A DNA stretch of 63,888 nucleotides, counting the filler, from Octopus bimaculoides (taxonomy: Eukaryota), in assembly GCF_001194135.2 (NCBI RefSeq). It is 4 parts of 4 records of this genome, joined end to end, with 100 filler letters (N's around TTAATTAATTAA, not from the genome) between each part and the next. Parts side by side here need not be neighbours in the genome. Positions count along the whole stretch, not along the records: positions 23,742 to 54,615 come from NC_068996.1; 3 more parts are not named here. The stretch is one strand, 5' to 3'. Within the stretch, counting starts at the first letter, position 1. Each line of letters starts with the position of its first letter. The notes under the pieces were generated by a model. It was not told where the DNA came from, did not search any database, and worked only from the letters and a program-made list of their open reading frames with translations. Positions 23,742 to 46,600 of the stretch are shown piece by piece. The position numbers and the translations under genes are program-made.

Positions 23742-24499
23742 GTGTGTGTGTGTGTGTGTGTGTGCATGTATGTATGCATGTATGTATGTATCTATATATA
23801 TGCATATATGGGTACAGGACGTCACAAAACGTAAGCAACATGAAATACGAAGACAAACTTGGGTATGCGAACAATGAGAGAAACAAATGGAAAACAAGAC
23901 AAGTAACATCAGTTATCGGCTATCCATCTACTCCTCATTTCGAGCAATTAACGACAATATGAGGCTTTAAAAGCAGTTGCTCCCGCGAACCAAAATAAAA
24001 TTTGGGATTTGCGGAGGGTCAAAGTTGGTAACAAAAACCTGACAGCGGAGACATACAATAAACCAAACGAAAACAAACATGGAGGGCCGTTAGACCAGAC
24101 ACGGTAAGGTAGCGAACGCTGGAGGAATATTGTCTTTGACAAGAGAAAAGATAGAAGAGCAGAAAGATAAGAATGCGTCTGGTTTGTAGACATACTGAAA
24201 GAAAAGAAAGGTGATCACGTGAGGAAAGGAAAGATGGACGATGGTCACGTGTGAGCAGCGAGGGAGAGAGAGAGCAAAGGAGAAAGAGGGAAAGACAGAC
24301 AGACAGATAGACAGACAGACAGACAGACAGATAGAAAACGGTGAAGGGGAGAAAAAAGAATTAAAGAAAGGATGAGAGAGAAAAAACGAAAGGGGGAGAA
24401 GGGGAGAAAAAGAATTAGAGAAAGGAAGAGAGAGAAAACGAAATGGGGATATATATGCACACACACACACTCACAAACACACACTCACAAACACACACA

Positions 24500-25203: not shown

Positions 25204-27349
25204 ATAGAGGAAGGTTTAATTCATTGAAGTTAATTATTGTAAACAGAGCTCTGTTTATATGAAAACCCCGCACTAAACAGGAAGTATGTAAAATTTATTA
25301 ATATTGCCAATGTTGTAAAGGAAATATACTCAGCTTTTATTTTGAAAAGGTTATTGAAATTCACATTCGCACGAACGTTTATAGCAGACATTTTATTTTT
25401 TGGTAGAATAATTCAAAAGAGGGATGCTTGTTTGATGTATTACAAAATACCAGGTTGATGTATTCCTGGTCCAATACAAAATACCAGGTTGGTGCCTGGT
25501 GTGAATAACATCGCCAAAAGTTGCAATATGCATCGGGTTCATTAAAGTACATTATTGCTCCATCTAAAAAAAAATATCTTTGTTTTGTGGCTTCGTCGTC
25601 CTGAGAAAGCAGTAATTCCCTAACAAGCTCAATGTCGATTATTTTCGAATCAAAATTGTAATTAGAGTTTTGTAATTTGTCGAATAATTTCAGTCTCGAA
25701 ACATTATTTGCTGTTAACTTTTTCCCTTCTATGAAATTTGTTTTTTATATTTTTAACTTTTCCAAAATTCATTTAACGTCATTGATAAAGATTTACGACA
25801 GTTATCTCAGTTGCGTGAGAAAAGCTTTTCTTAATGCTGTAAATTTTCTAAGAAGCAATCCTTTAAGTTCTTAGGTGGTATCAGTGACATTGTATTAAAT
25901 GGCAAAAATATTATTTTAATATTGTCACATAAGTTATTTGGTACAATTGCGTGACCTATGGCATTGTCTAAAATAATGACCGGTCAAAAGTTAAATAACG
26001 GAAACCGATACGTTTTTTTTTTAAAGCTGTAAAAGCAAAACAACATTAAGATACAACTGTATGGAAAACATGTCTGGTGCCATTAAAATCTACAATGCAA
26101 AAATATTGCAACCAAACGTAGTGCAAAGAGAGAAGCAATTGCTAAAACATAGCTCATTCGGCAAAGGGTAAATGCCAAGTCGTATGTAATGGATGTAACT
26201 TCTGAACTTCTGAGAGGCTAACGATTCTGTGACCGATAAACTAATATCATTTTTAATTTACAAACGCCTGAAGTATTTCCTTCCAATGAAAGCGAGAGTC
26301 TTCTTTGACATTTTCAATCTTGGTTCTGATTTTCATTATCCGGCTAAATAAATTTTAATCTGTATCTTCCCAAATAGTATAGTTTCAGTCACATTAAATA
26401 TTTGTTTGTAAACCTTATCGTCCTCTGCTAATTTTCTTTAATTTACTTTACTTACACCGACACCCTAGAACGCTACGAAGGCTAGTTCATTCTTTCGAAA
26501 CAGTTAAATTAGCTTGTATTTGGAGTAACAGTTTTTTTGAGTGTCCACTTAATTTCCATTTTGTATCTATTCTCTATTAAACATTACGTCTCGCTATGTT
26601 CACATTTCAGGTCAGTTCATATAAATAGCAAACATGCCATTTAGTTTATTTTCTGGTTGTTAGTAGGCCAGAAGACAATGAAACACTGTTCTTTCACCTT
26701 GTAAACATTCAGTTTCTCCGGAATACTTAATACTATAGACTTATTCATGGAGTATTCACGACTTTATTGTAGCGTTGTTATGAAGAAAAGTTTGTTGTCA
26801 GTATACATGTACATCATTTGTTGCTACGTTAATACAGAAAGCGTTCATGCAATTCGGCGCGATAGATGAAGAAAGATACCGCGACAACACAGCATCAAGA
26901 TTATGCACTGATGTGTAAAATTCAGCCTAAATATGAATTTATGATGAAGATCTCCTACACTTGTGTGATATACATCGTTTCACATAAAATTTACTGTTCT
27001 TGAATTGCATGAACACCTGTATTAATGTAGCAATAAATGATGTATCTGTAGTGGATCTTGCATGCATGAAGTGGATTCGATCCACTATAGCCAAATTTAA
27101 ATCAACACTGCAACAAAACTTTTCCCACGGTGGAAGAATAGCTTTTCTCTGACAGCAGTTTAATATTTTCCAGATGCCTTTAGCTAGGCCGAAACAATGT
27201 CTTCACCACTTGACCCTTTCTAACCTCTTCTACATCACCAAAAGCTAGAATAGATATAACAAGACCACAAACTAAAACTATTGTTCTCAATAATATATCT
27301 ATCCTTCTAGATAGTTATAAAAGCAAGAAAACCCCAAGAAAAATTTAGT

Positions 27350-28241: not shown

Positions 28242-30109
28242 GGTGAGGGATTATAATAGAAAGAGAGGAAAGGAAACTGGAGAAAGTTGATGAATGAGGA
28301 CCAGAGTAGAAGGAGAGTTGAGGCAAGTATTCATGTTCCTGGTAATTTAGCGTTACTATCCGTTCACTGAGCGACCGAAGCGTTTCATTTTTGTATCGTA
28401 CAAATTATTACTTTTACTCAGGCATATACACACTCAAATAGACATATATGTGAGTACATATGTGCACATGTGTTTATATATGCACACATTCAAATTTATT
28501 ACATACACATATATAAGCACAAATACATACATATTTACACACATTCATATAGTTGGCAGTCTGTTTCTATCTCTGTCCGTTTCCTTAGGAAGATAATTTT
28601 GATCTTATTGGGTCCTTGGGAACAGTTATACTAATTAAAGTATTATCTGTCATGTAGCAGGTATGTTTCAAACGTATGTTTATCATTATTGGTAATATCA
28701 GATAATGTAACATCTGTAGTTAATTGATAGTTAGTCTTTTCGCGATCGATAACATAATAGCGGGGCCCGTGAATATTTCATGAAATTAACGATAAACTTA
28801 CTGGGTTATTTCTGAAAACTTTATCCAAAAAACCTGAAAGTGTAGCCTGTGTTGTGCATGTATGGAAAGATTGTCGCTCATCTGCTACTCATTGAAAAGT
28901 GAAAGAAATTGGAATACGATGATTACTTAATGCACAATTTTATAGACTTAATACACAGCACTCATAAAATAAATATTCACTCTTATTTTCCCATTTTTCC
29001 CATTAACAAAAACAAAAAATATCCCGTACATATGATACAACCTTTACTCAAATTGCATATATCTGCTACGTAAATAAGCGTGGATATTTTACGATAGCAC
29101 TTATGCGCATGCGTTAAGTGATAGGTGATATAAAATATTCAATANNNNNNNNNNNNNNNNNNNNNNNNNNNNNNNNNNNNNNNNNNNNNNNNNNNNNNNN
29201 NNNNNNNNNNNNNNNNNNNNNNNNNNNNNNNNNNNNNNNNNNNNNNNNNNNNNNNNNNNNNNNNNNNNNNNNNNNNNNNNNNNNNNNNNNNNNNNNNNNN
29301 NNNNNNNNNNNNNNNNNNNNNNNNNNNNNNNNNNNNNNNNNNNNNNNNNNNNNNNNNNNNNNNNNNNNNNNNNNNNNNNNNNNNNNNNNNNNNNNNNNNN
29401 NNNNNNNNNNNNNNNNNNNNNNNNNNNNNNNNNNNNNNNNNNNNNNNNNNNNNNNNNNNNNNNNNNNNNNNNNNNNNNNNNNNNNNNNNNNNNNNNNNNN
29501 NNNNNNNNNNNNNNNNNNNNNNNNNNNNNNNNNNNNNNNNNNNNNNNNNNNNNNNNNNNNNNNNNNNNNNNNNNNNNNNNNNNNNNNNNNNNNNNNNNNN
29601 NNNNNNNNNNNNNNNNNNNNNNNNNNNNNNNNNNNNNNNNNNNNNNNNNNNNNNNNNNNNNNNNNNNNNNNNNNNNNNNNNNNNNNNNNNNNNNNNNNNN
29701 NNNNNNNNNNNNNNNNNNNNNNNNNNNNNNNNNNNNNNNNNNNNNNNNNNNNNNNNNNNNNNNNNNNNNNNNNNNNNNNNNNNNNNNNNNNNNNNNNNNN
29801 NNNNNNNNNNNNNNNNNNNNNNNNNNNNNNNNNNNNNNNNNNNNNNNNNNNNNNNNNNNNNNNNNNNNNNNNNNNNNNNNNNNNNNNNNNNNNNNNNNNN
29901 NNNNNNNNNNNNNNNNNNNNNNNNNNNNNNNNNNNNNNNNNNNNNNNNNNNNNNNNNNNNNNNNNNNNNNNNNNNNNNNNNNNNNNNNNNNNNNNNNNNN
30001 NNNNNNNNNNNNNNNNNNNNNNNNNNNNNNNNNNNNNNNNNNNNNNNNNNNNNNNNNNNNNNNNNNNNNNNNNNNNNNNNNNNNNNNNNNNNNNNNNNNN
30101 NNNTGTGTG

Positions 30110-30157
<48 letters not shown>

Positions 30158-31077
30158 CGTGCAGGTGAGCGTGTGTAATATGTATGTATGCGATTATGTA
30201 TTTATGTTTGTTTACGTCCTCGTAATCTTGCGGTTCGTCAAAAGTGATTGATAGAATAAGAATCAGACTTAAAAAATAATTACTTGCGTCGATTTGTTCG
30301 ACTAAAACCCTTCATAGCGGACCCCAGCATGGCTGCTGTCCAATGATTGAATCAAGTAGAAGAAGGTAAAAGGACACAAGCCAAGCTTATCATAAGCTAT
30401 TTCCCCTCCACGAAATGAACCCCGCCATACCAAACCAGATAATAGTCTATTACTACGCAAGTAATAACAGATATGTATATAAAAACATATTCGGAGTTCT
30501 TTAAGAATGGTACCTCCTACCACTCAAATGCATGACCCAACCGAGTCCATAAGCTTTTAATTGCACTAAAGTCAGCATTGTCTTCATAATTTTCTTAATG
30601 TTTATGTATTTATTTATAAGTTATTTATCTATATTAAATTCTCATCAGATGAGTGTACCAATGTTGTCGTTCTGCCTGACGCGAGTTAGACTACTACTCC
30701 CAAAATGGAACCCATGCAGAGGAAACACCAATAGTTTGATGAAACGGAACTGCGAGATATATGTAATGACTTATTCAGAGTCATATGTGTGCGTGTGTGT
30801 ATCATTGTATCGCTGTATTGACCAGGCTATCGGATTTTGTTACACGGTCACAATGCTCTTTCTTGCATTGTTGCAGCCTTCGAATGATGCTACACCACAG
30901 GGTAGGAGGTAGGCCAACATTCCCCCAGAACAGAATGCCAGTCCGTCGCAGGGTTACACGTTTATAGCTGAGTTGACAAAAGCAATGTAAAATGAAATGT
31001 TTTACTGAAGAACACAACATACCGTCGAAGCCTTAACCAAAGGCGCCTTCACACACCCAACACACGCACGCACGCAT

Positions 31078-31254: not shown

Positions 31255-31715
31255 ATTTTTATGATGTGGAAACGAAGGTCCAGTCCATGGAATGGTGTCT
31301 TATTCTTCATCCCAAGCCCAATATGTTCAAGGTATAACATTAGGCACAGAAAGTCATAGACAATGTTTCTTTAAGATGTCAAGGGCGTCATTCTTATTGA
31401 TTTTCTGGATAGTGACTGTGCCGTGAATGACGAGCGGTGCATTGAGACACTACGCGACCCAGCAAATCTTTGACTAAAAAAAAAAAAAAATCAGGTAATC
31501 AGCAAATTGTGCTTGTCAATGGTTCTTCACCCACTATCCAACCCGAATTTGGTACTCTTTGACTTCTGCTTGTCTGGTTCATTGGATGTCCGTCTTTGAG
31601 TACAAGGCTTTAATTTCATAGGTGGGGTAAAAGTGGCTGTGAAGAAGTGGGTACAGCAGTGTACATTAGAACTTTTTCAAAGAGGATTCGGAAGTTGGAT
31701 TCCGTGATGGTGCAA
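31255..31715 (+). pseudogene. Highly decayed mariner transposase fragment
   Basis: YDVETKVQSMEW, DVKGVILIDFL, and HPLSNPNLVLFDFCL (a decayed HPPYSPDLAPSDFHLF). Many stops. Confidence 0.65.
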
Positions 31716-33574
31716 CTATTTACGCGCGCGCGTGTGGTTGTATGAACTTCGTGGGTCACCATTGTTGGAATGGATAGAATAGGGCTTGATTAGTTGGTAT
31801 GAAGTTAAGGCTGCGTGCTGTCCCATATTAAAACCAACTCCGAAGAGTATTTAACACGCATTTATTCATACATGTGCGCAACACAATATTTACATAATAA
31901 TACGGATGCTTGCCAGGGTTATATTGCGGTCTGCCAGTATAACTGGAGTACATAGTCAAATTAATAAGCGATAAGAATGGCTTCGAGTAAGAGGCGGGAA
32001 AATACTCCGTTTATCATAGTCGATAAATCCTATAACCCAGGGTCTAATGTTGCAACCAAGAAGCAGTTTTCGCACGGACTTGTTGTCTGTGTAAGCTATA
32101 TGCTCCTCTGGTGTGTTTGACCACACTTTGGCTTTTATAATCCCAATTTACGAGAGAACATCTGGAACTTTCGATAAGAGAGGTGATATTGTTGCAAGAT
32201 GATTGGTTAGTATTCAGGGTAGTCACCTGATCTGATATAGTCTAATCCTCGTTACAAAACCAACACGGTTTCGAATCTAGGCCTTACAACATTACACTCC
32301 ATACCCTAGTGCGATCGAGAAGGAAAGCGAACGAGAGCAAAAAAAAAAACTGTAGCAAAAACTCACAGGCAATACAAAGCAAGGAATTAGCATGCAAAAC
32401 ACTAGAAGAATGTAACTAAAAAATGCAAAATGCATATAACAAGGTGAAAGCATATACAACGAAATGTCTATAATTCGAAAATTCATAATGTTAAATTGCT
32501 AAAATATAAAAAATACGAGAGAGAAAACAGTTCCTGAAATGTCTCCGAAATGACAATTTCAAGAATAGTACTGTGTTTGTGCATATTGAAGGAAAGTGCG
32601 AGATGCTGAATGTACTAAGCCATTTAGGCCTATTTTGATATTCAACATAACCAGGGAGAGGTTGTATAGATGAAAATAGATGGTTGGAAGCAAGGTGCAG
32701 ACAAGCATGGTTGTATTCCTTCTGTCTGAAATTATCTGCATGTGCATTTGTTGGGCTTGAATGTGGCATGTGAATTTATCTGCAAGTGAAGCCTGCAAAA
32801 ACAAAACAAAAAAGAAGCATTAACTTTGGACATGACTGACTTGTAAGGATATAAATGGAGTAAAGAGGGCAGGACAAAAAAATGTTTAGACTAGAATGAA
32901 ATGAAATATAAATTTATATACATGTGAAAAAAGAGTTTTTCGGTGTCCCTTCTACGAAGTCAAGTATGCAAAGCAATGTGGTTGTAATTCGCTTTTGTCG
33001 TCGGTCGCAATTGAGCGCGTAATTTGCCCTTTTGGTCCATGTTAGCCTAACAGATCAGTCGTCTCGTTGTTGTCGGCTGGAGACGAGTCGTTTTGTTAAT
33101 GCCGACGTGGAAGTTAACCCATTGTCGTAGTAGTGTCGGCGTCGATGGTGCGAAAGTCTAAATCATTTGAGTGGTGTGTTTTGTATCGAATAGTAAACTG
33201 CAATAATTTGTATGTTCATCGGGGTTTATCACTTGGAAGTTTATTGAGTGGCTCTTACGCTGTTGAATTCAGCAGTTTATAGTGAATGTCAGTAAGTGAC
33301 ATCCTTTAATTTTTATAACTGCATGCGAGAAAGAGAGGTCACCATCTTGTACGTAAACGACAAGAAAATAAGAGAGACGTTTGTAATAAGTCATAACATA
33401 TTTATTACTGGATGTAATGTGTTAACATATAAGGTTAATTGAAGGGAAAAGGTTGTAGCATCACATGAACATATTTTGCAACCACGTGTCTCAAAACAAA
33501 TAAGGTGAACATCCGCGCGTGCGGATGTGTATGCCAGTGGCGTGACTCATTGCATGTCTAGGATCTGACAGGCA

Positions 33575-33610
33575 AGAGTGGCGCGAAATTAGAATGTGTT
33601 CCTTTATATA
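33575..33610 (-). promoter_or_regulatory. TATA box and initiator
   Basis: TATATAAA at 33610-33603 and YYANWYY match CCACTCT with its A at 33579, 31 nt downstream. Confidence 0.6.
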
Positions 33611-33658
33611 AGGGATGAACCTGAAGTCCCTGACTTCCACGTCATCCGGAAGTCAATT

Positions 33659-33693
33659 GGAAGCTTCTAGAATGTTCGAGAATTTTCGAGAAG
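33659..33693. promoter_or_regulatory. Perfect heat-shock element, 7 alternating nGAAn pentamers
   Basis: gGAAg cTTCt aGAAt gTTCg aGAAt tTTCg aGAAg. Confidence 0.85.
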
Positions 33694-34623
33694 GTCGAGG
33701 GAGATTACTCTCGTTAGATCCCTTTTTCGTTTTGCTTTCCTGCTTGACCGCCAGAGGTCACTACAAGTTTATTGTAGTTGAATGTCAGGTGTCGGGTTAT
33801 TATTTCGCTTGTTGCTTTTNNNNNNNNNNNNNNNNNNNNNNNNNNNNNNNNNNNNNNNNNNNNNNNNNNNNNNNNNNNNNNNNNNNNNNNNNNNNNNNNN
33901 NNNNNNNNNNNNNNNNNNNNNNNNNNNNNNNNNNNNNNNNNNNNNNNNNNNNNNNNNNNNNNNNNNNNNNNNNNNNNNNNNNNNNNNNNNNNNNNNNNNN
34001 NNNNNNNNNNNNNNNNNNNNNNNNNNNNNNNNNNNNNNNNNNNNNNNNNNNNNNNNNNNNNNNNNNNNNNNNNNNNNNNNNNNNNNNNNNNNNNNNNNNN
34101 NNNNNNNNNNNNNNNNNNNNNNNNNNNNNNNNNNNNNNNNNNNNNNNNNNNNNNNNNNNNNNNNNNNNNNNNNNNNNNNNNNNNNNNNNNNNNNNNNNNN
34201 NNNNNNNNNNNNNNNNNNNNNNNNNNNNNNNNNNNNNNNNNGTGACAGAATAAAAACATTATGTTCGGGTCAACGACTCAACAAAAACACCACCCCTCAA
34301 ACAAACAATCATATATAAAAAATACACCATGGTCCACAAACACATAAGAAAAGTATATAATATAAAAATAATACATATATATAAAATGTAGTATTTTTAT
34401 ACTAGTCTCATTTATATTTGAGCACTTCTTTTGCAATCCTATATAAACTCTTTTGTTTCTTAATAGGAAACAAATTTTATTAGATATATATATATATATA
34501 TTCATTCAAACCTACCTACCTACCTACATACATACATACATACATACATACATACGCACACATACATACATACATACATACATACATACATACATACATA
34601 CATACATACATACATACATACAT

Positions 34624-36840
34624 CAAGGACAAATCTTGTTGCCAAAAATGAAATCACCGAGATGGCAGGAAACTACAGGCCCATTGCTTGCCTAAACATT
34701 ATGTACAAACTGTACACAAGTTGCGTCAACCAATTCCACCAGGACCATTGTGAGTCGAACAACATTGTGACTGATGAACAGGCTGGTGGAAAAAAGGGAG
34801 TGTGAGGATGTGCTGAACAACTTTCAATAAACAAAGCTGTACTGTCTGAAGTAAGAAAACAACGCAGAAACCTTGTGACAGTATGGCTTAACTATAAGAA
34901 GGTATTCGACTCTATCCCTACATCTGGCAAAAGTACCTACTACCTTAATTACTGCTATAGAGAGACTCACAAAGACATGGACAACTATTCTTACCCTTAC
35001 AACTGAGAACAGAATAATTGTTTCTCATGGTATAGGTATTAAAAAGAGAATATTCCAGGGAGATAGTCTTTTTGTACTACTTTTCATTTTGGCACTGAAT
35101 CCATTATCGTTTCTACTGCAGAAAACAAATGGTTACATGCTAGGATCTTCAACTGCCAGAAATATCAATGTAACTCATAATTTCTTTGTAGATGACCTGA
35201 AGATTTATGCTAAACGTGTTAACAATGCCCCAAAAAATGGAATTATTAACATTTTCTGCTGATATAGGCATGGAATTCCGCCAAAAGAAATGTTCATATT
35301 TGGTTACAGAACGAAGAAAAACCCAAACCCAAAACCTGTGCATCAACGGTCTCTCTATTTCTCTCATTCTATACAAAGAATGTTACAAGTACTTAGGCAT
35401 AGATGAAAATGTATCATGTGAAGGCACTGTGAATAAAGATAGAGTGACCCAAGAGTATTACACCAGACTTAGGAAAATATGGCAGTCGGAACTCTCCTTT
35501 TACAACAAAACAATTTCCCACAATGCGTCTGCAGTACTAGTGCTGAGATCAACATTTGGGATACTTGATTGGTTTGTAGGGGAAATCCACTCCATAGATA
35601 TCAACACCCGCAAAATCCTGACAACTGGGAACTTCCACAAAAACAGTGATGTTGACAGGCTCTGCTTAAGAAGAAATGAAGGTAGTAGAGGCCTGAAATC
35701 AGTGCAGACGGCCTTCGAATGCCGTATGGTATCACTCAGGCAGCATCTGCTAAACAGCAGCAGCAAACATAAATATATTAATGTAGTCCTGAAAAATCAA
35801 GTGAGCAACATTGTACGAGTTGGCAGTGAACTCCTCAAGAAACACTCTCTTCCTGATGATCTCCTATACAGCCCCAACATAGCTGGACTCTCTTACCTCA
35901 GAGAAGACCTGGATGGAAAGCACTCAACATACAAAAAAAAAAGACTATGCATAGATATACTTCCCGGAAGCTTGAAGAAGACAGTAGAATTGATACAAAG
36001 CGCAGCCTCTCTTGGACACAAGACCACTACATCACATCACACTTTGAAGGCTATGCGTTTGCAATCCAGGAACAGGAAATTGCCACAAAGTACCTGGTGA
36101 ACAAGAGAGAGACAGTGACGCTCTTGTAATCCCAAGGTGCAACCGCATGTGTAGGCTATGTCGTGTTTCTGTGGAAGATATTACGCATGTGTTTATCAGC
36201 TGTCCTAAAATGTCGTCACGGTACTACCTCCCTATGCGACACAACGTTGTTGCTAAAACAATTTACAAAGCTATCCGCAAAAGAGACTATCCTGAAATAA
36301 ACTTCGAAAATCCCTCTGTTATGGAATACATTCATAAACACCAACTCGAGGAATACTAGGGGAATATTTCCATCAAAACTTCTGTCAAATGTAAGTATAA
36401 CAGGCTGGATATTGTTGTTTGGGACAGAGGAACAAAGGTATGTACCATCATAGAAGTCAGCTGCGCTACAAATATAAATATCTCTTTGAAAATCAAAGAC
36501 AAAGAGGATATCTATGGACAACTTCTTCGAAACCTCCAGCTTCTATATCCAGATTATGTATTCATATTCATATTAATAATAATTGAAGCACTAGGTTTTG
36601 TTAGTAAATGCTTAAAGGAAAATCTGGATACACTGGGATTTTCAGAAAGAGAAATCGACCAGCTAATTCGTACAGTACAAGTCCAATCTGTGAGTGGAAC
36701 AGTCAAAATATGCAAGACTTTTCTCAAGTTCCAAATGTGAATTTGTCTGTGTTAATTATATCCTAAAGATGGAGCCTTGTATCTGATGGAAACCGGCTCC
36801 CTCCTTAGTGAAAAATTTATAATAATTAAAAGACAGAAGA
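34624..36840 (+). mobile_element. R4/Dong-like RLE non-LTR retrotransposon, 5'-truncated, decayed
   Basis: NYRPIACLNIMYKLYT, EQAGGKKG, YKKVFDSIP, LFVDDLKIYAK, YKYLGIDE, CRLC..EDITHV.ISCP..RHNVVAK, RLDIVVWD..IIEVSC, GTVKICKTFLKF*. Multiple stops and frameshifts. Flanked on both sides by (TACA)n. Confidence 0.85.
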
Positions 36841-38041: not shown

Positions 38042-38480
38042 TGGAGGCGTAATGGCCCAGTGGTTAGGGCAGCGGACTCGCGGTCATAGGATCGCGGTTT
38101 CGATTCCCAAACCGGGCGTTGTGAGTGTTTATGAGCGAAAACNNNNNNNNNNGTGAGTGTTTATGAGCGAAAACACCTAAAGCTCCACGAGGCTCCACGA
38201 GACTCCAGCAGGAGATGGTGGCGAACCCTGCTGTACTCTTCCACCACAACTTTCTCTCGCTCTTACTTCCTGTTTCTGCTGTACCTGTATTTCAAAGGGC
38301 CAGCCTTGTCACACTGTGTCACGCTGGATATTCCCGAGAACTACGTTAAGGGTACACGTGTCTGTGGAGTGCTCAGTTACTTGCACGTTAATTTCACGAG
38401 CAGGCTGTTCCGTTGATCAGATCAACTGGAACCCTCAACGTCGTAAGCGACGGGGTGCCAACAACAACAACAACAACAAT
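38042..38480 (+). mobile_element. tRNA-derived SINE with (CAA)n tail
   Basis: A box TGGCCCAGTGG at 38053-38063, B box GGTTTCGATTCC at 38096-38107, no tRNA cloverleaf 3' end, (aac)n tail. It sits between (TATG)n runs. Confidence 0.85.
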
Positions 38481-39241
38481 GTATGTATGTATGTATGTAT
38501 GTATGTATGTATTCAGAGAGAGGGGGAGAGGGAGAGAGGAACGTAGCGTTTATCGCGGTTTACGACTAAGGCGTAATTCGATTCATACGGTTTATTTTTA
38601 ATGACTATATGCCAATTATGTGAAGCATGATTTCAGTTATCGTCCTCTGCCATTTAGCAAAATTGACTAGGTTTTCAAGGTAAAGTAATGAAGTTTTTGC
38701 TGCACACAGTTACCGCTCGTCGCATTGTTAGTAAAGCTAAGCTGCTAAAGACATGAATGTTTGCATCAGTTGACCTTGAATCTCACTCGTCTAACCTTCT
38801 CTCACCACCTTTCACTGATCTCCCTCTCCATAACTAAAGCTCGTAACTCTCCTTCAATGTGTTTCATGCACAACATATGTTAACTAGTATCACATCTAAA
38901 TATATTCTCTCTTGACGAATTCTTCTCACAGCATTTTTATGAATCAATCTGCAATAAATTCATTGGATAAAATGTTGCCGGCGCAAACTCTCATCTTTCC
39001 TAGATTCTGGAATATACCTGAGATATAAGCAGTGCTGTATTGGACATTGCAGGTTACTCGTTCCTTCCAACAAATGTTGTTCATGGTTTCATGTCGAATA
39101 AGTGGTTGAACAGGAGGAGGAAGAGGAGGAGGAGGAGTTAAGATTGAACTAATGCATTGCAGCATACGAACAACTAAACATTAGACAAATATCGAACAGA
39201 TTTAATCAGAACTTTCAATTATTTCGGGTTTAAAATAACAA

Positions 39242-39627
39242 TGTAGTAAAGATTGTTTGCCAACATAACATAGCAGTCTTGGTTTAGGACTAATGTTGCT
39301 GTAATTTAGCCCAAGAGACATCGTCTTCAGCTGGCTATACGACACAATCTGTGTCCTTATATTTTCGAACAAGGAAATCTAGCACCCCAGCTCAGCTCAA
39401 AACAATATCTGTGTATCGCGATTTCTGGGTTATTTCTCATCAGAAATTGCGATACACAGATATTGTTTTGAGCTGAGTTGGGGTGCTAGATTCCCTTGTT
39501 CAAAAATACAAGGACACAGATCGTGTCGTATAGCCAACTGAAGACGATGTCTCTTGGGGCTAAATTACAGTAACATTAGTCCTAAACCAGGACTGCCATG
39601 TTATGTTGGTAAACAATATTTACTACA
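39242..39627. repeat. 386-bp near-perfect palindrome (fold-back/MITE-like)
   Basis: tgtagtaaa..atttctg arm, 13-nt spacer ggttatttctcat, then cagaaat..tttactaca arm. Confidence 0.92.
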
Positions 39628-39805
39628 AAGTACTGTTGCTGAATATCTCACGTTGTGAGATTAAAAAAAATAATAATTTTCTAACTTAAAATAACAATAT
39701 CTACAAACTTGAGTACAGCTAATTCTATAAATGTTTCACTTAACATAATTATACGCGAATATATGCTATACAGAAGATCAAACAAAAAGGTTCACATATA
39801 TTCAT

Positions 39806-40018
39806 TTCTACTCCAGGCACAAGGCCCGAAATTTTGGGGGAGGGGGCTAGTCGATTAGGTCAACTCCAGTATGCAACTGGTGCTTAATTTATCGACTCCG
39901 AAAGGATGAAAGGCAAAGTCGACCTCGGCGGAATTTAAACTCAGAACGTAAAGACAGACGAAATACCATTAAGCATTTCGCCCGGCGTGCTAACGTTTCT
40001 GCCACTTCGCCGTCTTAA
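39806..40018 (-). mobile_element. tRNA-derived SINE (ggcggcgagctggcagaa family)
   Basis: cgaaaggatgaaaggcaaagtcgacctcggcggaattt..cgtgctaacgtttctgcca; the same family recurs at 40888-42918 and 55140-56250. Confidence 0.85.
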
Positions 40019-40697
40019 GGCTCACATATATTAACACAAATGCCAGACATCTACCCGTAGTATTCAAAAGTTTTGAGGAAAAAATACTTTCCAGTCTGCA
40101 GGCGTGGCTGAATCGATAACAAGCTTATTTCCTAACTATGTGGTCTTAGTTCAGTTTCTTTATTATAGAATAAAGGAAATCTCTAATGCAGAATGACTGT
40201 GTAAAAAGCTTAGAAGATCGGGTAAATACCCTTAGAAGACGGCAAAAAATGGTCAGCAAGTTGCTACCGAGAATCGAACCTTGTACCTCTCGAGTTTCGG
40301 CTGACCACTCAGTACTATTTAGCTATGCGACCCTTGACAACAAGCACCGTCTTTTGAAGTACAAGGTTCGATTCAATGTAGCGGCTTGCTGGCCACTTTT
40401 TCCCGTCTTCTAAAGGTATTTATTCGATCCTCTGAGCTGTTTTCACAGCTATTCTGCGTTCGCGAATTCCTTTATTGTTTGTAAAATTCCAACTCACTTT
40501 GTGCTTTAAAGTCTGTTTTAAATGCGCGCGCGCATCTATGTGTTATTTGTCTCCTACCACTGCTTGATTAGAGTGTGGTTGATTGATTCATCAACAGCCG
40601 TTAAACTGTCTTCTAGGTAACTTTGCATGTGTATATGTAAGTCTATGTATGTGACATGTATTTATATGTATAATATATATTTATGTTCGTATTTCTC

Positions 40698-40738
<41 letters not shown>

Positions 40739-41160
40739 ATATTTTATATGTGCATATGTGTACATTTAGTTATGCAGTTAAGTAATGTGCTGTTATGTCG
40801 TACGACTAACTTTATAATCTTCATATTACACTATTTATAATTGGCAGCAACCTGGTTTGTATTGCACTTTCGGCCAGGAAATAGTTCTTTTCTACTCTAG
40901 GCTCAAGTCCCGAAATTTTGGGGGAGGAGGCCAGTCAATTAGATCGACCCCAGTACGCAACTAGTACTTAGCTTCTTATTTCTTTATTGCCCACAAGGGG
41001 CTAAACATAGAGGGACAAACAAGGACAGACAAAGGGATTAAGTCAATTACATCGACCCCAGTGCGTAACTTGTACTTAATTTATCGACCCCGAAAGGATG
41101 AGAGGCAAACTCGACCTCGGCGGAATATGAACTCAGAACGTAACGGCAAACGAAATACCG

Positions 41161-42856
41161 ATTTCTTTATTAGGCATAAAGCCCTAAACATAGATGGAGA
41201 CACCACAAGGACAGACAAGACCACAGTAGGGACAAAAAACATAAAACGAATGTAAATGAAATGAAAGTTATATAAAAATGAAAAAATGAAAATGGACGCA
41301 TGGGCCCAACTCCCTTGCGGTACCATTTGAACCGTTATATGTACTATTTACAATTGTTCTTTTTTTTCTCCTTTAATTTCATACTTTTTTTTGTCTTTAG
41401 TAGAACTTCATTAGTGGTTCGATATCTCTTAAATCCACCACTGGTGGCAACTCTTTAAATTCCACCTCCACTCCTGGCGGGTCAACGTTATCTCCACATA
41501 TCTCTTTCAATTTTCTGTAGTTTTCTTCTTCTATCACTATTGCCTTCATATCCTCTGCGTAGACGTATGAAGGCACCTTCACTCTTACTATTGAGTGTAA
41601 CTTGATTATTTTTTTCTGTTTCAACATGTTTTAGGTACGTTACATAACACCATACTCCTTCTCCTCCTCGTATCTTCTTTCCTTTCTCTTGGACTTTTGG
41701 TTCTCTTTTTTCTTCCTCCATAAATAGTCTCTCCATCTCACCTTCATACAGTTGAGTTTCTGACACTTTCTCCACTGGTAACACCACTTTCTTTTTACTT
41801 CCTACTGCCCTCCTTCACAGTTCCTTTTCTCACCTCTTCTCTCTTCTTTTTCTGCTTCTCTGGCGGAGAACTCATTCCTCCTCTCCTTCTTTTCTTTTTA
41901 ACTATAGTGAATACCTTCTCCGTTTCTTTTTCTGTTGCCTTGTCCTATACTACTTGGTCCACACTCTCATGTTTCTCCTCCTGTTCTGTTTGTGGCTTTC
42001 TTTGGGTGCACCATACCTTCATGTGACCCCTTTCTCCACATGAGAAACATACTGGCGGCCTGCCCTCCACAATGACTCTCAGCTTCACATCTTCTGGCAG
42101 CACAATCTCATCCACCACACTATTCAAGTCCTCCGTTGTTGCCTGAATCGTTAATTCGATACCATATCCCCAGTAGTTCACCTTCTGGGTCCTGGTAGCC
42201 TTCAGAATCTTCCCATCCTTCATATTATATGTTATTGCTGTCATCAGCCATTCTTCCTTTAATTCGGGTGGCACCCTATCCACTCGCACTTTGGCCACAC
42301 GTTTGCCGCAGTATGAAGGCAGGAGCATCCATTCTTCTGACCTTATAGCCTCTGTGGTGTACTTTATTGCTTCTTCCTCCGTTGTGAAGTGCACCTCCAC
42401 AGTGGCGTATCTCCTTCCTCTCGTAACGTATGTTGTAACTCTTTTCAATTCCTTGATACATTCCTCTATGGCTTCTATCGGCGCAATCACTATTTTCCTC
42501 GTGGCTGTCTTCATGGTTTTAAATGTTACCGTTCGTTTTAACACGTTGGCCGATAGCTCATCCGGTGGCGTTAGCTTCAGTATGTTACCTTCCTTAGTGA
42601 TTAGTTTTTCACTCTCCTTCATCTTTCTGGGCTCCACTTTTATTTCTCGGACCTTCAACTCTTGCACGTCTACTCCTTTGCTTGTTGCGGCCGCATAACT
42701 GGGGCCTGCCTTCGGCGCCTTCTCCATTTTCCCACAATGGGAAACAAAGCAACAATTAACGAATCAACAACGGCAACAATTAAACAACAATTCAATCAAC
42801 AACGGCAACAATTCAATAAACAATTCAACATAGACTCACGCAATAACTTCACAGAG
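41161..42856 (-). mobile_element. ORF1-only (HAL1-like) non-autonomous retroelement
   Basis: ~130-bp 5' UTR, ORF1-like coding region, ~235-bp 3' UTR ending AATAAAGAAAT, and no ORF2. TSD ACGAAATACCG (41150-41160) / ACGAAATATCG (42857-42867). Confidence 0.75.
41945..42727 (-). CDS. LINE ORF1/gag-like protein with CCHC zinc knuckle (260 aa; probably continued by broken frames to 41397)
   Basis: PSYAAA near the N-terminus and CFSCGERGHMKVWC knuckle, followed by E/K-rich segments in ORFs 41488-41787 and 41397-41627. Confidence 0.75.
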   Translation of the reverse strand: MEKAPKAGPSYAAATSKGVDVQELKVREIKVEPRKMKESEKLITKEGNILKLTPPDELSANVLKRTVTFKTMKTATRKIVIAPIEAIEECIKELKRVTTYVTRGRRYATVEVHFTTEEEAIKYTTEAIRSEEWMLLPSYCGKRVAKVRVDRVPPELKEEWLMTAITYNMKDGKILKATRTQKVNYWGYGIELTIQATTEDLNSVVDEIVLPEDVKLRVIVEGRPPVCFSCGERGHMKVWCTQRKPQTEQEEKHESVDQVV

Positions 42857-45264
42857 ACGAAATATCGCTAAGCATTTCGCCCCCGGCGTGCTAACGTTTC
42901 TGCCAGCTCGCCGCCTTCGGCCACGAAATAGTTATTACATAGTAGCAACGATACGCATGCGTGTGTCAGAGTGCAAGTATGTGTGTATTTGTTTGAGGAT
43001 GCAAGTATTTATGTAGGTGGGGTACGCACGCGTGCGTGCATATATCTGCACAGTCCATAGAGGAGATGAGTATGTGTGTGGATATGTGGATGTGTGTATG
43101 GGTGCATTTATATGTGCGTGAGTGTAGGTATGTGTGTGAGTGCCTTGGCGCTTCTGCTGCAGGTGTGTGTGTTTGGTATTCCAAAAAAGAAGACGCTGAA
43201 TCGGTTTAGCACATCTTTATTTCTAGTTTCATTTGTCTCAGCACCACTTCGTTAAAAGCGTAAATGGTTTCATGTGAAGTTACGTAATATTAGCGGCTGG
43301 TTACATTGCAGCAGCTTTTCATCGAATTTGCATCAAACTTTGATGCAAGTCTGATGAAAAGCCGCTGCAGTATAATCAACCATAAAGTTGTTAATCCCTA
43401 TGGAGTTACTGAATCCTATGCTATTGTCTTATTCTAGATGTTTCTAATAATGTTAAGTGGGTTCCAAATCAACAAACTCTTTCCTCTCTTAAATCACATG
43501 GTTATCTATTCTATATTTTTTCAATTCATAAATCTACCCCAGCTTCATCCATCCAGGCTTTTTCATCAACATGAAGATAAACACCTGGAATTAATTTCGT
43601 TATTTAATATTGTTTTTCTTTTAAAAATTAACATTGATTTAAACTTGGTGTCAAATGTGAGGCGGTTTAATATAATAGTGAACTTCGTCATTTCATGATT
43701 TGTACTTTCTATTAAAATAATTTGTTTAGCTTCTGATGTCAGCAATTTTATTGCTGAGGAAACCCAATCTGAGACTACTTCTTCAGTCTATCTGTGGAAA
43801 TTTGTAATTTATTCCTTTCAAGGTCTGCTAAGAGTTTCTGTGAACTTCTTCTCTTCTAATATTATACAAAATTGCAGGGTTTTTTTTTTTCTTCATTAAG
43901 TGGAAACGTCAGTTTGTTGCTGTTGCTTTGAAATCTCCGGCTTCATTTGGCCGTGTTTTTGCCCGTTTAAGTGCTCAGCTATATTTCCTAATATCAAGTG
44001 GCGATGTAAATATTTCGTTCAATGAGCTAACCTTATAAATAATTTCCTAACTCTGGCCATTGATAGATACTGGTTGTTTCAGCACATTTCTTCTTTGACA
44101 TCTTCAGAGAAGCTTTGCTTAACCACACACCAATATTTTTTCACTCCATATTTCTTCACTGTAACACTGTTTGAAAATAATCACAAATGTACCAACGTTC
44201 AAACTGAAACTAACGTTATATTTTTATTTATTTATGTATTTTAGTTAGCTGGCTAGCCCATTTGATAAAATATTTCAACAATATTATAAACTGAATGCGT
44301 TAAAAGTTTAACAGACACAACTGTAAAGGACAACCAATTTTTCTAGTAGGTCACGTGATATGACGGAAAGCAAGATTTGGTTTATTTATTTAGATGTTCT
44401 GTAGATGTACTACTGTGTTTTGCTATATAATATACTTGTAAGACCTTACAAGTACGAAACATACCAAATGTTGTCACTATACTTACCAAAGATCAAGCTC
44501 ATTCACTGCTGCATAACCTCATTTAATTTTTTTATATTTGAATTTCAGAGTTGCCATCCTTGCCTTCTATGATAAGAAATATCATTTCGCTAAATTATTA
44601 CGTTATTTCCACTACGGATGTAATTTAAATGGAATAAAGATTTAGTAGAGGCTCACTACGTTAAGTACTTTAGCACCTCTCACTTAACGTTTGACTATAT
44701 ATTGGTGTGAAAGAAAATAAATACAGAGTGCATGAGATAAGAGAGTTTACGTATTCATTTGAACCCCATGATTCACCAATTTTCGCGGAAATGAAATATA
44801 TGTATATATACATATGTAATATAATCTATGTTTATATATAAACATATCTGAAAGTGTGTTTTATGTGGTGGTTCAAGTGTATGTATATGTGTATGGGAAT
44901 GGCTGTATGCATGGGTCTGTCTGTGTGTATGCTTTTATGGGTTCGTTCTGAAACGGAAAGGAAGTGTGGAGATATGGGCATGTGGGGATGAGAGGTTCCA
45001 TCCACAAGGCAAAGTAAACAGGAAGAAGTGTTTGGAAAAAAATTAATGTAGTTGGTGGGGATTTATAGACGTGCCAATTCATATGTCCCAACTAGTTAAG
45101 AGTGGTGGTTGCGCTAAGTTTGGGTCGGGGTGGAAACAACGTCTGTATGAATAGAATTGTGGGGAAGATAGACGTTTGACTTGCATATATGTACGCCTGT
45201 AAACGTACGTAAATACAATGACACAATGTAGCGTAGTAAACACAGGTGCACATAAATACATGCA

Positions 45265-45520: not shown

Positions 45521-45589
45521 TTTGCATTATTGAATCTGTATCTGCCAAATGATGTGTTGAAGGTAGTGAGCATGGATGATTCTTTCTCT

Positions 45590-46600
45590 ATCTTTATATT
45601 TCAGTACCCATTGCTGGCATCCAGTTTGCTGAATATCTTAGATCCAGCTAATGATGGTGTGATTTCTTCGAGGGTTGGAATTGGATAGTAATCTCGTTTT
45701 AATGCCTTGTTCAGATCCCTGGTGTCAAGGCATATTCGTAGGGTACTATTGGGTTTTTCTTTAATTACAATTGAATTCACCCAGTCGGTTGATTGTGTCA
45801 CTTTGGTGATTATTTGTTTTTCCCTCTTCTGTCCAAATCTGCCTTTAGCTTCTCTCTTAATTCTAGCGAAACACGGCGAGGTGGATGGACAACTGGCTTG
45901 ACGTTGGGGTCGACTGTTATATGGTACCGATACTTCTCAAAACACCCGACTGTATCATCAAAACATTCTGGGTACATGCTCATCAGTTCATCTTTATTTC
46001 TAATTGGTGGTCGATCTTTGATAGGCATATTTCTGTCAATCCTGCTAGGAGCTACCTTCACTTCACTGTTGATTGATACAATGTTGAGCTTTTGACAGGT
46101 ATTAAGTCCGAGAATTGCGGGTCCTTCTGTTCTTGTGACATAAAAAGAACACTTGATTTTTCTTCTTTGTGTATCCCTGTAATGGTTGTTTTGCCCAGTT
46201 GTGGAATCCTGGTACCTCCATATGCAGTCAGGATTACATCACTTGGTGTGAGGATTCTTTCTTTGACTTTGTATCATGTGTTCTGGGAACATCTTTTTGT
46301 AGAGGTTGACAGGCAAGATATCGCTCGAGGCTCCAGTGTCAATCTTTAGCTTTAGGTCAATGTTTATTTGTTTCTTGCCTGACTTCTTTTGGATTTGTAT
46401 TGTTGTGTATGCCTCATTTTTTTCTTCGGTTGTTGTTTCCCATCTTATGAACATTAATTGTGCTGAATACCAAGAATTCATCCTCTGAGGTGTTTTCTTC
46501 TTGTTGTTGGGCATGTACATCTCCTTGTCTTCTCTTTCCGATCCCCCTTGAAAGCTGGGGCTTGTATTTGTGAGATTTTGTTAATCTATGCTGGCACTTG
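45590..46600 (-). pseudogene. Ty3/Gypsy pol remnant (protease and RT start)
   Basis: LKLKIDTGASSDILP protease motif, then VDPNVKPVVHPPRRV..LRE and DWVNSIVIKEKPNSTLRICLD.RDLNKALKR..YPIPTLEEI...IFSKLDASNGY. Frameshifted. Confidence 0.88.

What the first reader, a model, noticed from the sequence alone, without database searches (positions are those of the whole stretch)
33337..34247. LTR carrying a perfect 7-pentamer heat-shock element in a textbook HSE-TATA-Inr promoter: candidate heat-inducible retrotransposon
Seen on the minus strand, in order: seven perfect alternating nGAAn units (33693-33659), ETS/CRE-like ccggaagt and acgtca, TATATAAA, an Inr 31 nt later (33579), a TGAGTCA AP-1 site (~33549-33543), AATAAA, an ACA end (33348) and a TGGTGACC PBS-like site. 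No heat-shock-protein ORF follows. Established: three or more contiguous inverted nGAAn units bind HSF, and the Arabidopsis ONSEN element is heat-activated through HSEs in its LTR. Inference: a stress-inducible LTR family in an ectothermic marine animal, or an HSF-responsive promoter donated to neighbouring sequence.
Basis: partly seen in the sequence, partly recalled or inferred. Interest (0 to 1): 0.75.

Follow-up and report, generated by a model that had tools for sequence, protein, structure and literature searches.

The report
Orphan heat-shock promoter, LTR status unproven
A complete, textbook heat-shock-factor promoter sits on the minus strand with no gene behind it; it could belong to a heat-inducible retrotransposon, but nothing available here shows that it is an LTR.

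Summary
On the minus strand, seven perfect alternating nTTCn/nGAAn pentamers (33693-33659) are followed by CCAAT, an ETS/CRE cluster, TATATAAA (33610-33603), an Inr with its A at 33579, TGAGTCA, AATAAA (33406-33401), ACA (33350-33348) and TGGTGACC (33344-33337). About 1e-7 such seven-unit arrays are expected in the piece by chance, and no other run of three or more units occurs.

No heat-shock protein or other recognisable coding sequence follows in the roughly 9.8 kb downstream. The predicted transcript has 19 ATGs and no ORF longer than 41 aa in its first 780 nt, and no good splice donor in its first 700 nt.

The LTR reading is not demonstrated:
- There is no second copy in the 30.9-kb piece.
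- No gag or pol lies next to it on the same strand.
- The 5' boundary lies in or beyond the assembly gap.
- The primer-binding-site match is only 8 nt.
- The source species is absent from every searchable collection, so copy number could not be measured.

Best reading: a genuine HSF-type promoter driving a short non-coding unit, most likely retroelement-derived (about 0.4). Rivals are a non-coding first exon of a host gene, a heat-inducible lncRNA, or a stranded promoter. HSE-bearing LTRs are already known in plants and in a flatworm, so even if true this is a new member of a known kind.

The parts
33659..33693 (-). Heat-shock element: seven contiguous perfect alternating nTTCn/nGAAn pentamers, which is also about three copies of a 10-nt unit. 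It spans -114 to -80 relative to the predicted start.
33656..33660 (-). CCAAT box directly abutting the HSE, at about -81 to -77.
33631..33655 (-). Palindromic cluster TGACTTCC-GGATGACGT-GGAAGTCA: two inverted ETS-type GGAA cores around a CRE/ATF half-site TGACGT.
   Evidence: ACTTCCGG occurs only once in the piece.
33603..33610 (-). TATA box TATATAAA. It also reads as a consensus TATA on the + strand, but there it would sit on the wrong side of the HSE.
33575..33581 (-). Initiator CCACTCT. The predicted +1 is the A at 33579, 31 nt after the first T of the TATA box.
33382..33579 (-). Predicted short non-coding transcribed segment (R-like). It has several short upstream-type ATGs and no usable splice donor. 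It contains TGAGTCA (33549-33543), a 7-bp G+C-rich hairpin (about 33527-33510) and CACGTG (33488-33483), and it folds better than shuffles (z -2.45, computed over 33579-33345).
33401..33406 (-). First poly(A) signal AATAAA, 174 nt after the predicted start. It is followed by a CA and a T-rich stretch (33380-33355).
   Evidence: AATAAA is frequent in this DNA, about 1.1 per kb per strand.
33337..33350 (-). ACA (33350-33348), a 3-nt spacer, then TGGTGACC (33344-33337): a possible LTR end plus primer-binding-site start. It can equally be read as a Kozak-context ATG followed by a weak splice donor (ATG|GTGACC).
   Evidence: The octamer occurs twice in the piece.
32930..33336 (-). CpG-rich non-coding stretch downstream of the unit (leader-like). 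Its longest ORF is 26 aa, from an ATG at 33040. The stretch ends at an A+T-rich junction near 32925.
33694..33819 (-). Known part of the upstream (U3-like) region. It is unique sequence that runs into the gap.
33820..34241 (.). Assembly gap of 422 N (length only estimated). Any upstream boundary of the unit lies in or beyond it.

Best explanation
**What it is.** The minus strand of 33693-33575 is a genuine RNA polymerase II promoter of the HSF/hsp70 type.

**How it most likely works.**
1. Under proteotoxic stress, HSF trimers occupy the seven-pentamer array. This step is inferred from what is established for three or more inverted nGAAn units.
2. Together with CCAAT-, ETS- and ATF-type factors, HSF recruits polymerase to the TATA box and Inr.
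3. Transcription starts at or near 33579 and runs towards lower coordinates.

**What it transcribes.** The product is non-coding. A poly(A) signal with a T-rich downstream element lies 174 nt after the start.

**Most likely carrier.** Promoter and terminator together form a self-contained unit of about 350 nt. The unit ends in CA and is followed 3 nt later by TGG. This is the U3-R-U5 layout of a retrotransposon LTR. I take the single most likely carrier to be a retroelement-derived LTR: either a solo LTR or the 5' LTR of an internally truncated copy, and either young or kept intact by selection.

**Shown versus inferred.**
- Shown: the motifs, their spacing, their improbability by chance, and the absence of coding sequence downstream.
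- Inferred: HSF binding, heat induction, the start site and the LTR identity.
For: - The seven-unit perfect HSE is unique in the piece, with about 1e-7 expected by chance.
- The order and distances HSE-CCAAT-ETS/CRE-TATA-Inr are canonical.
- No chaperone, gag, pol or other Pfam domain lies in the 9.8 kb downstream.
- After the start there are 19 ATGs in the first 780 nt, no ORF longer than 41 aa, and no donor scoring above 2 bits in the first 700 nt. This argues against an ordinary hsp mRNA leader.
- AATAAA, then CA, then a T-rich tract, then ACA, then TGG follow in LTR-like order.
- The neighbourhood is transposon debris: LINE RT, a Ty3-like PR-RT fragment, a CCHC ORF, mariner and pogo remnants, and SINE-like repeats.
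- The promoter motifs are undamaged while the neighbouring LINE carries at least three frameshifts and two in-frame stops. This fits a young insertion or selection.
- Precedent exists for HSE-bearing LTRs: ONSEN (PMC3907296) and Macrostomum lignano Ty3 clades (PMC12801592).
Against: - There is no second LTR copy within the piece at sensitive settings.
- No gag or pol lies after the putative primer-binding site, and none was found upstream on the same strand in 38153-44000.
- The 5' terminus and target-site duplication are unreadable because of the gap.
- The primer-binding-site likeness is 8 nt. At position 16 it has C, where complementarity to the conserved tRNA C61 would require G. This rule is my own knowledge of tRNA structure, applied to the sequence.
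- AATAAA and TGGTGACC are expected by chance at appreciable rates.
- No family member could be found anywhere. This is uninformative, however, because the species is missing from the collections.
Confidence: 0.4

Rival explanations
1. It is the promoter and non-coding first exon of a host heat-shock-response gene. The gene would be of a chaperone or co-chaperone type with a 5'-UTR intron, and its coding exons would lie beyond the piece's end at 23742 or in the gap at 29145-30103.
For: - The architecture is that of bona fide hsp promoters.
- The CpG-rich domain at 32930-33800 could be a promoter island.
- Only about 9.8 kb downstream is visible, and short exons escape Pfam scans.
Against: - There is no acceptable splice donor in the first 700 nt. 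The first decent ones are 1.2-1.35 kb downstream.
- With 19 ATGs before any of them, the leader would be a very poor one for a stress mRNA.
- No exon-like match lies anywhere downstream.
- CpG observed/expected is not distinctive in this piece.
Confidence: 0.2
2. It is a single-copy, heat-inducible non-coding RNA gene of the host, comparable in logic to Drosophila hsr-omega. It would be transcribed from 33579 and polyadenylated at one of the local signals at 33406, 33310 or 33245.
For: - A complete promoter precedes a non-coding transcript with nearby poly(A) signals.
- The first 235 nt fold better than shuffles, z -2.45.
- The motifs are intact despite decayed surroundings.
Against: - No Rfam family matches the locus.
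- Nothing distinguishes this reading from an LTR except copy number, which is unknown.
- Host lncRNAs with such strong HSE arrays are rare. This is my own knowledge.
Confidence: 0.2
3. It is a stranded promoter. It once drove a heat-shock gene that was removed by deletion, rearrangement or mis-assembly, and it now drives nothing of function.
For: - The region is full of transposon insertions and assembly gaps.
- No coding sequence follows.
Against: - All seven pentamers, the TATA box and the Inr are perfect. In a neutral relic they should have decayed like the neighbouring LINE.
- No trace of a chaperone ORF remains, even at E-values up to 1.
Confidence: 0.12
4. It is a chance or slippage product. 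A short palindromic TTCnnGAA motif was expanded as a 10-nt minisatellite in microsatellite-rich DNA, and it lies near a TATA-like A+T-rich run by coincidence.
For: - TRF reads the array as 2.8 copies of a 10-nt unit.
- The piece is crowded with tandem repeats.
Against: - TATATAAA lies 49 nt downstream and an Inr exactly 31 nt further on.
- CCAAT and a unique ETS/CRE palindrome sit between them.
- I estimate the joint chance of the TATA and Inr placement alone at about 0.002. This is a rough figure from the motif frequencies.
- The three 10-nt copies differ at the non-contact positions only.
Confidence: 0.03

Closest known systems
Canonical HSF-dependent hsp70-type promoters of animals
   Same: - Contiguous inverted nGAAn units lie within about 120 nt of the start.
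- A CCAAT box and an ATF/CRE-type site sit between the HSE and the TATA box.
- The TATA box is at -31 and a consensus Inr follows.
   Different: - No chaperone ORF or any coding sequence lies behind it.
- The leader is full of ATGs, and a poly(A) signal comes after only 174 nt.
HSE-bearing Ty3 LTR retrotransposons of the flatworm Macrostomum lignano (Mag, CsRN1, Gmr1/Osvaldo clades; PMC12801592)
   Same: - Canonical HSEs lie upstream of the start within an LTR-like promoter unit of a spiralian animal.
[quoted passage not shown]
   Different: - Those families are defined by paired LTRs, gag-pol and many copies, and heat induction of more than 250-fold was measured.
- None of these features is shown here.
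ONSEN (ATCOPIA78), the heat-activated Ty1/copia element of Arabidopsis (PMC3907296, PMC13602373)
   Same: The logic would be the same: an LTR promoter that borrows the host's HSF pathway.
   Different: - ONSEN is a plant Ty1/copia element with shown HSF dependence.
- Here the LTR identity itself is open.
Helitron-borne HSEs in Caenorhabditis (PMC6927752)
   Same: A transposable element spreads HSF binding sites through an animal genome.
   Different: - Helitrons are rolling-circle DNA transposons that carry HSEs without a dedicated TATA-Inr-poly(A) unit.
- I saw no Helitron-type 3' end next to the one G+C-rich hairpin in the unit. This was by eye only, from the sequence.
Heat-inducible non-coding loci (Drosophila hsr-omega)
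   Same: An HSE-driven promoter lies in front of a transcript without coding capacity.
   Different: - hsr-omega has a characteristic exon-intron-tandem-repeat body.
- No tandem-repeat body follows here.

Membership tests
HSF-dependent heat-shock promoter | Three or more contiguous inverted nGAAn pentamers | tested here: met
   Seven perfect units at 33693-33659. About 1e-7 are expected by chance.
HSF-dependent heat-shock promoter | HSE placed upstream of a core promoter (TATA and/or Inr) at promoter-proximal distance | tested here: met
   The HSE spans -114 to -80, the TATA box starts at -31, and the Inr A is at 33579.
HSF-dependent heat-shock promoter | Drives a chaperone or other stress-response coding gene | tested here: not met
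   No Pfam domain was found in three minus frames over 33700-30104 and 29144-23742. The gap at 29145-30103 and anything beyond 23742 are unseen.
HSF-dependent heat-shock promoter | HSF occupancy and temperature-dependent transcription | not testable with these tools
   No expression or binding data are reachable.
LTR of an LTR retrotransposon | Two direct copies flanking an internal region, or membership of a dispersed multi-copy family for a solo LTR | tested here: not met
   There is no second copy in the 30.9-kb piece at blastn word size 7. The genome-wide family could not be tested because the species is absent from the collections.
LTR of an LTR retrotransposon | TG...CA termini with short inverted repeats, flanked by a 4-6 bp target-site duplication | tested here: inconclusive
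   A 3' ...ACA is present at 33350-33348. The 5' end lies in or beyond the gap at 33820-34241, so neither the inverted repeat nor the duplication can be read.
LTR of an LTR retrotransposon | Primer-binding site complementary to a tRNA 3' end just after the 5' LTR | tested here: inconclusive
   - TGG lies 3 nt after CA, and the match is 8 nt (TGGTGACC).
- Position 16 is C, where pairing to the conserved tRNA C61 would need G. That rule is my own knowledge.
- No tRNA gene is in the piece for comparison.
- The primer I had in mind is tRNA-Trp. I did not test it.
LTR of an LTR retrotransposon | Adjacent gag/pol coding region (downstream of a 5' LTR, upstream of a 3' LTR) | tested here: not met
   - No gag, protease, RT, RNase H or integrase domain lies downstream.
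- None was found upstream on the same strand in 38153-44000.
- The nearest pol fragment, at about 45529-46520, is 12 kb away.
LTR of an LTR retrotransposon | Promoter and poly(A) signal within one unit (U3-R-U5) | tested here: met
   TATA-Inr at 33610-33575, AATAAA at 33406-33401, a T-rich tract, then CA at 33349-33348. This is weak evidence, because AATAAA is common in this DNA.
Helitron carrying HSEs | 5' TC and 3' CTRR ends with a sub-terminal G+C-rich hairpin, inserted between A and T | not tested
   I inspected this by eye only around the hairpin at about 33527-33510, and saw no CTRR at the usual distance.

The most novel reading that the evidence does not exclude
The unit is one copy of a cephalopod LTR-retrotransposon family that has captured a seven-unit HSE and rides the host heat-shock response. 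That would be a third independent lineage after ONSEN in Brassicaceae and the Ty3 families of Macrostomum lignano, and the first in a mollusc. It would also be a candidate source of HSF-responsive promoters scattered through a very transposon-rich genome.
Probability: 0.3. Interest if true: 0.6.

Novelty: new member of a known kind. Interest (0 to 1): 0.4.

Why it matters
**If the unit is an LTR family.** It would extend HSF hijacking by retrotransposons to molluscs. So far this is documented with experiments only in Brassicaceae and one flatworm. It would also give a concrete way to ask whether temperature stress changes transposon transcription in an ectothermic marine animal.

**If it is a single-copy host locus.** It marks an unannotated heat-inducible transcript, coding or not, that gene prediction would miss.

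**In either case.** The promoter is a clean, compact example of the conserved HSF architecture in this lineage.

Tried and rejected
**Searches for other copies**
1. I used a 68-aa + strand ORF over the HSE as a protein query. No word hits were found.
2. Exact look-ups of four window ORFs found none on record.
3. Exact DNA scans of metagenome contigs, with a 47-mer and a 25-mer, and of prokaryotic genome contigs, with a 24-mer, returned 0 matches.
4. I tried to reach the same locus in another assembly through the neighbouring LINE ORF. The best relatives were only 43-65% identical. The two contigs I fetched share 66-70% nucleotide identity over the RT alone. The source species is therefore not in the collections, and all the nulls above say nothing about copy number.

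**Searches for known features**
5. The Rfam E-value scan found nothing at the locus. Its miRNA rows are microsatellites and one hairpin.
6. ARAGORN found no tRNA to test the primer-binding site against.
7. A plasmid-collection search, as a contamination check, found no match.

**Ideas considered and dropped**
8. CpG observed/expected as an island marker: it is not distinctive in this piece.
9. + strand transcription from the same TATA box: the HSE would then lie inside the transcript.
10. The 9-nt direct repeat GTGACCTCT as a target-site duplication: about 0.7 such pairs are expected by chance.
11. A non-autonomous TRIM-type element: there is no second LTR within reach.
12. The Ty3-like fragment at 45.5-46.5 kb as the body of the same element: it is 12 kb away and shares no sequence with the unit.
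Full report
**What is in the sequence.** The following features occur in order on the minus strand.

| Feature | Coordinates | Note |
|---|---|---|
| HSE, seven perfect alternating pentamers CTTCT-CGAAA-ATTCT-CGAAC-ATTCT-AGAAG-CTTCC | 33693-33659 | |
| CCAAT | 33660-33656 | abuts the HSE |
| Palindromic cluster TGACTTCC-GGATGACGT-GGAAGTCA | 33655-33631 | two inverted ETS-type cores around a CRE/ATF half-site |
| TATATAAA | 33610-33603 | |
| Initiator CCACTCT | 33581-33575 | A at 33579, 31 nt after the first T of the TATA box |
| TGAGTCA | 33549-33543 | |
| CACGTG | 33488-33483 | |
| AATAAA | 33406-33401 | followed by a CA and a T-rich tract |
| ACA | 33350-33348 | |
| TGGTGACC | 33344-33337 | 3 nt after ACA |

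Two motifs, ccggaagt and acgtca, were quoted in their + strand spelling.

**Is it more than chance?**
- From the GAA and TTC frequencies of the piece, about 1e-7 seven-unit arrays are expected.
- In 300 block shuffles the longest run was 4, seen once.
- The array is the only run of three or more units in 30.9 kb.
- TRF also reads it as 2.8 copies of a 10-nt unit, so slippage may have lengthened a shorter element.
- The copies differ only at positions that do not contact HSF.
- The array is followed at canonical distances by CCAAT, a unique ETS/CRE palindrome, the TATA box and the Inr.
- The motifs further downstream are individually weak. AATAAA occurs about 1.1 times per kb per strand, and TGGTGACC occurs twice in the piece.

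**The gap.** Positions 33820-34241 are 422 N. The flanks share nothing longer than 8 nt. G+C is about 0.40 below the gap and 0.26 above it. The ORFs that cross the gap are runs of X. Continuity therefore cannot be established. Everything claimed here lies on the low-coordinate side, which is contiguous down to 30104. The consequence is that any upstream boundary of the unit is unreadable.

**What lies behind the promoter.**
- Pfam scans of all three minus frames of 33700-30104 and 29144-23742, with stops marked X, found no chaperone, gag, protease, RT, RNase H or integrase domain. The only hit was a weak pogo-type DDE_1 remnant at 25867-25980.
- The first 780 nt after the predicted start hold 19 ATGs. 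The longest ORF is 41 aa.
- No splice donor in the first 700 nt scores above 2 bits on a simple consensus matrix. The first decent ones lie 1.2-1.35 kb downstream.
- Poly(A) signals lie at 33406, 33310 and 33245.
- The first 235 nt fold better than shuffles, with z -2.45.
- No Rfam family matches the locus.
- The transcript is therefore, as far as can be seen, short and non-coding.

**Surroundings.** The neighbourhood is transposon debris.
- On the + strand, 34662-36740 is a 5'-truncated LINE-type reverse transcriptase. Its relatives carry PF00078 and are 43-65% identical. It is broken by at least three frameshifts and two in-frame stops.
- On the minus strand there is a 260-aa ORF with one CCHC knuckle at 41945-42727.
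- Also on the minus strand, a Ty3-like protease plus N-terminal RT fragment lies at about 45529-46520.
- Other debris comprises a mariner-like remnant at 31375-31470, a SINE-like pair, a long hairpin, and many (TGTA)n and (CA)n arrays.
- No host gene was recognised in the frames scanned.
- The repeat content looks cephalopod-like to me. That is recognition from memory, not a test.

**Is it an LTR?**

In favour:
- Promoter and poly(A) signal sit in one unit of about 350 nt.
- A CA end is followed 3 nt later by TGG.
- The sequence downstream is non-coding.
- The setting is transposon-rich.
- The motifs are undamaged next to decayed neighbours.

Against or untested:
- No second copy of 32900-33819 exists in the piece, even at word size 7. 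It is therefore not a complete element or a miniature one.
- No gag or pol lies after the putative primer-binding site, or before the unit on the same strand in the stretch scanned.
- The 5' terminus and target-site duplication are hidden by the gap.
- The primer-binding-site likeness cannot extend far. Position 16 is C, where pairing with the conserved tRNA C61 would need G. This rule is my own knowledge of tRNA structure.
- No tRNA gene is available in the piece for a direct comparison.

At most, then, it is a solo LTR or a 5' LTR with about 420 nt of leader, truncated near 32925.

**Copy number, the decisive variable, could not be measured.**
- A protein-space search with the ORF over the HSE found nothing.
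- Four exact ORF look-ups found nothing.
- Three exact DNA scans of public contig collections found nothing.
- The adjacent LINE must be highly repeated in its genome, yet its best relatives were only 43-65% identical. The two contigs I fetched share only 66-70% nucleotide identity.
- The source species is therefore simply not represented, and the nulls carry no weight.
- A search of the plasmid collection, as a contamination check, was also empty.

**Mechanism and ranking.** All live explanations share the same first step: HSF trimers on the array drive TATA/Inr-dependent initiation near 33579 under proteotoxic stress. This is inferred from the established rule for three or more inverted nGAAn units. 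The explanations differ in what carries the promoter.

| Carrier | Confidence |
|---|---|
| Retroelement-derived LTR-like unit | about 0.4 |
| Non-coding first exon of a host stress gene with distant exons | about 0.2 |
| Single-copy heat-inducible non-coding RNA gene | about 0.2 |
| Stranded promoter after loss of its gene | about 0.12 |
| Slippage and coincidence | about 0.03 |

**Comparison with what is known.**
- As a promoter it is a textbook member of the HSF/hsp70 class, apart from lacking a gene.
- As a possible transposon feature it has direct precedents.
  - ONSEN in Arabidopsis (PMC3907296).
  - Four Ty3 families of the flatworm Macrostomum lignano. Their canonical HSEs give more than 250-fold heat induction and are needed for it (PMC12801592).
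  - HSE-carrying Helitrons in Caenorhabditis (PMC6927752).
- The flatworm paper presents its case as the second experimentally validated one among LTR elements.
- A cephalopod family would therefore be a new member of a known kind, not a new kind.

**Verdict.** Interest is moderate at 0.4. If a census shows a dispersed family, interest rises to about 0.6.

Noticed in passing
window 34662-36740 (+): A 5'-truncated LINE-type reverse transcriptase next to a (TGTA)n array. It is broken by at least three frameshifts and two in-frame stops. Its closest database relatives are only 43-65% identical (PF00078).
   Followed up: partly
window 41945-42727 (-): An intact 260-aa ORF with a single CCHC zinc knuckle (gag-like or LINE ORF1-like). 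No pol domains follow it on the same strand down to 38153.
   Followed up: partly
window ~45529-46520 (-): A Ty3/gypsy-like aspartic protease plus the N-terminal part of an RT. It has at least one frameshift and is cut off at a CA microsatellite. It shares no sequence with the HSE unit.
   Followed up: partly
window 39310-39558: A near-perfect hairpin (118-nt arms, 94% complementary, 13-nt loop). It gives sub-threshold hits to plant MIR families in Rfam and is probably a MITE-like foldback.
   Followed up: no
window 39801-39967 and 40885-41159: Two copies (85% identical) of a SINE-like repeat. A further SINE-like stretch lies on the minus strand at about 30230-30420.
   Followed up: no
window 31375-31470 (+) and 25867-25980 (-): Decayed DNA-transposon remnants. 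One is a mariner-like transposase peptide, recognised by eye with Pfam silent. The other is a pogo-type DDE_1 fragment (E 7.5e-4).
   Followed up: no
window ~34282-34293 (-), just above the gap: A purine-rich GAGGGGTGG is followed directly by TGT. It looks like a polypurine tract plus an LTR start and would fit an LTR of about 940 nt, but it cannot be evaluated across the gap.
   Followed up: no
window 33762-33754 and 33342-33334 (-): A 9-nt direct repeat GTGACCTCT brackets most of the unit. About 0.7 such pairs are expected by chance in 500 nt, so it is probably meaningless.
   Followed up: partly
window ~33527-33510 (-): A perfect 7-bp G+C-rich hairpin (CATCCGC / GCGGATG) lies about 55-70 nt into the predicted transcript. 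Its function is unknown.
   Followed up: no
window 23742-54615, many sites: All Rfam 'mir-297', 'mir-466' and 'mir-3149' rows fall on (TGTA)n or (CA)n microsatellites and are below the gathering scores. They are false positives.
   Followed up: yes
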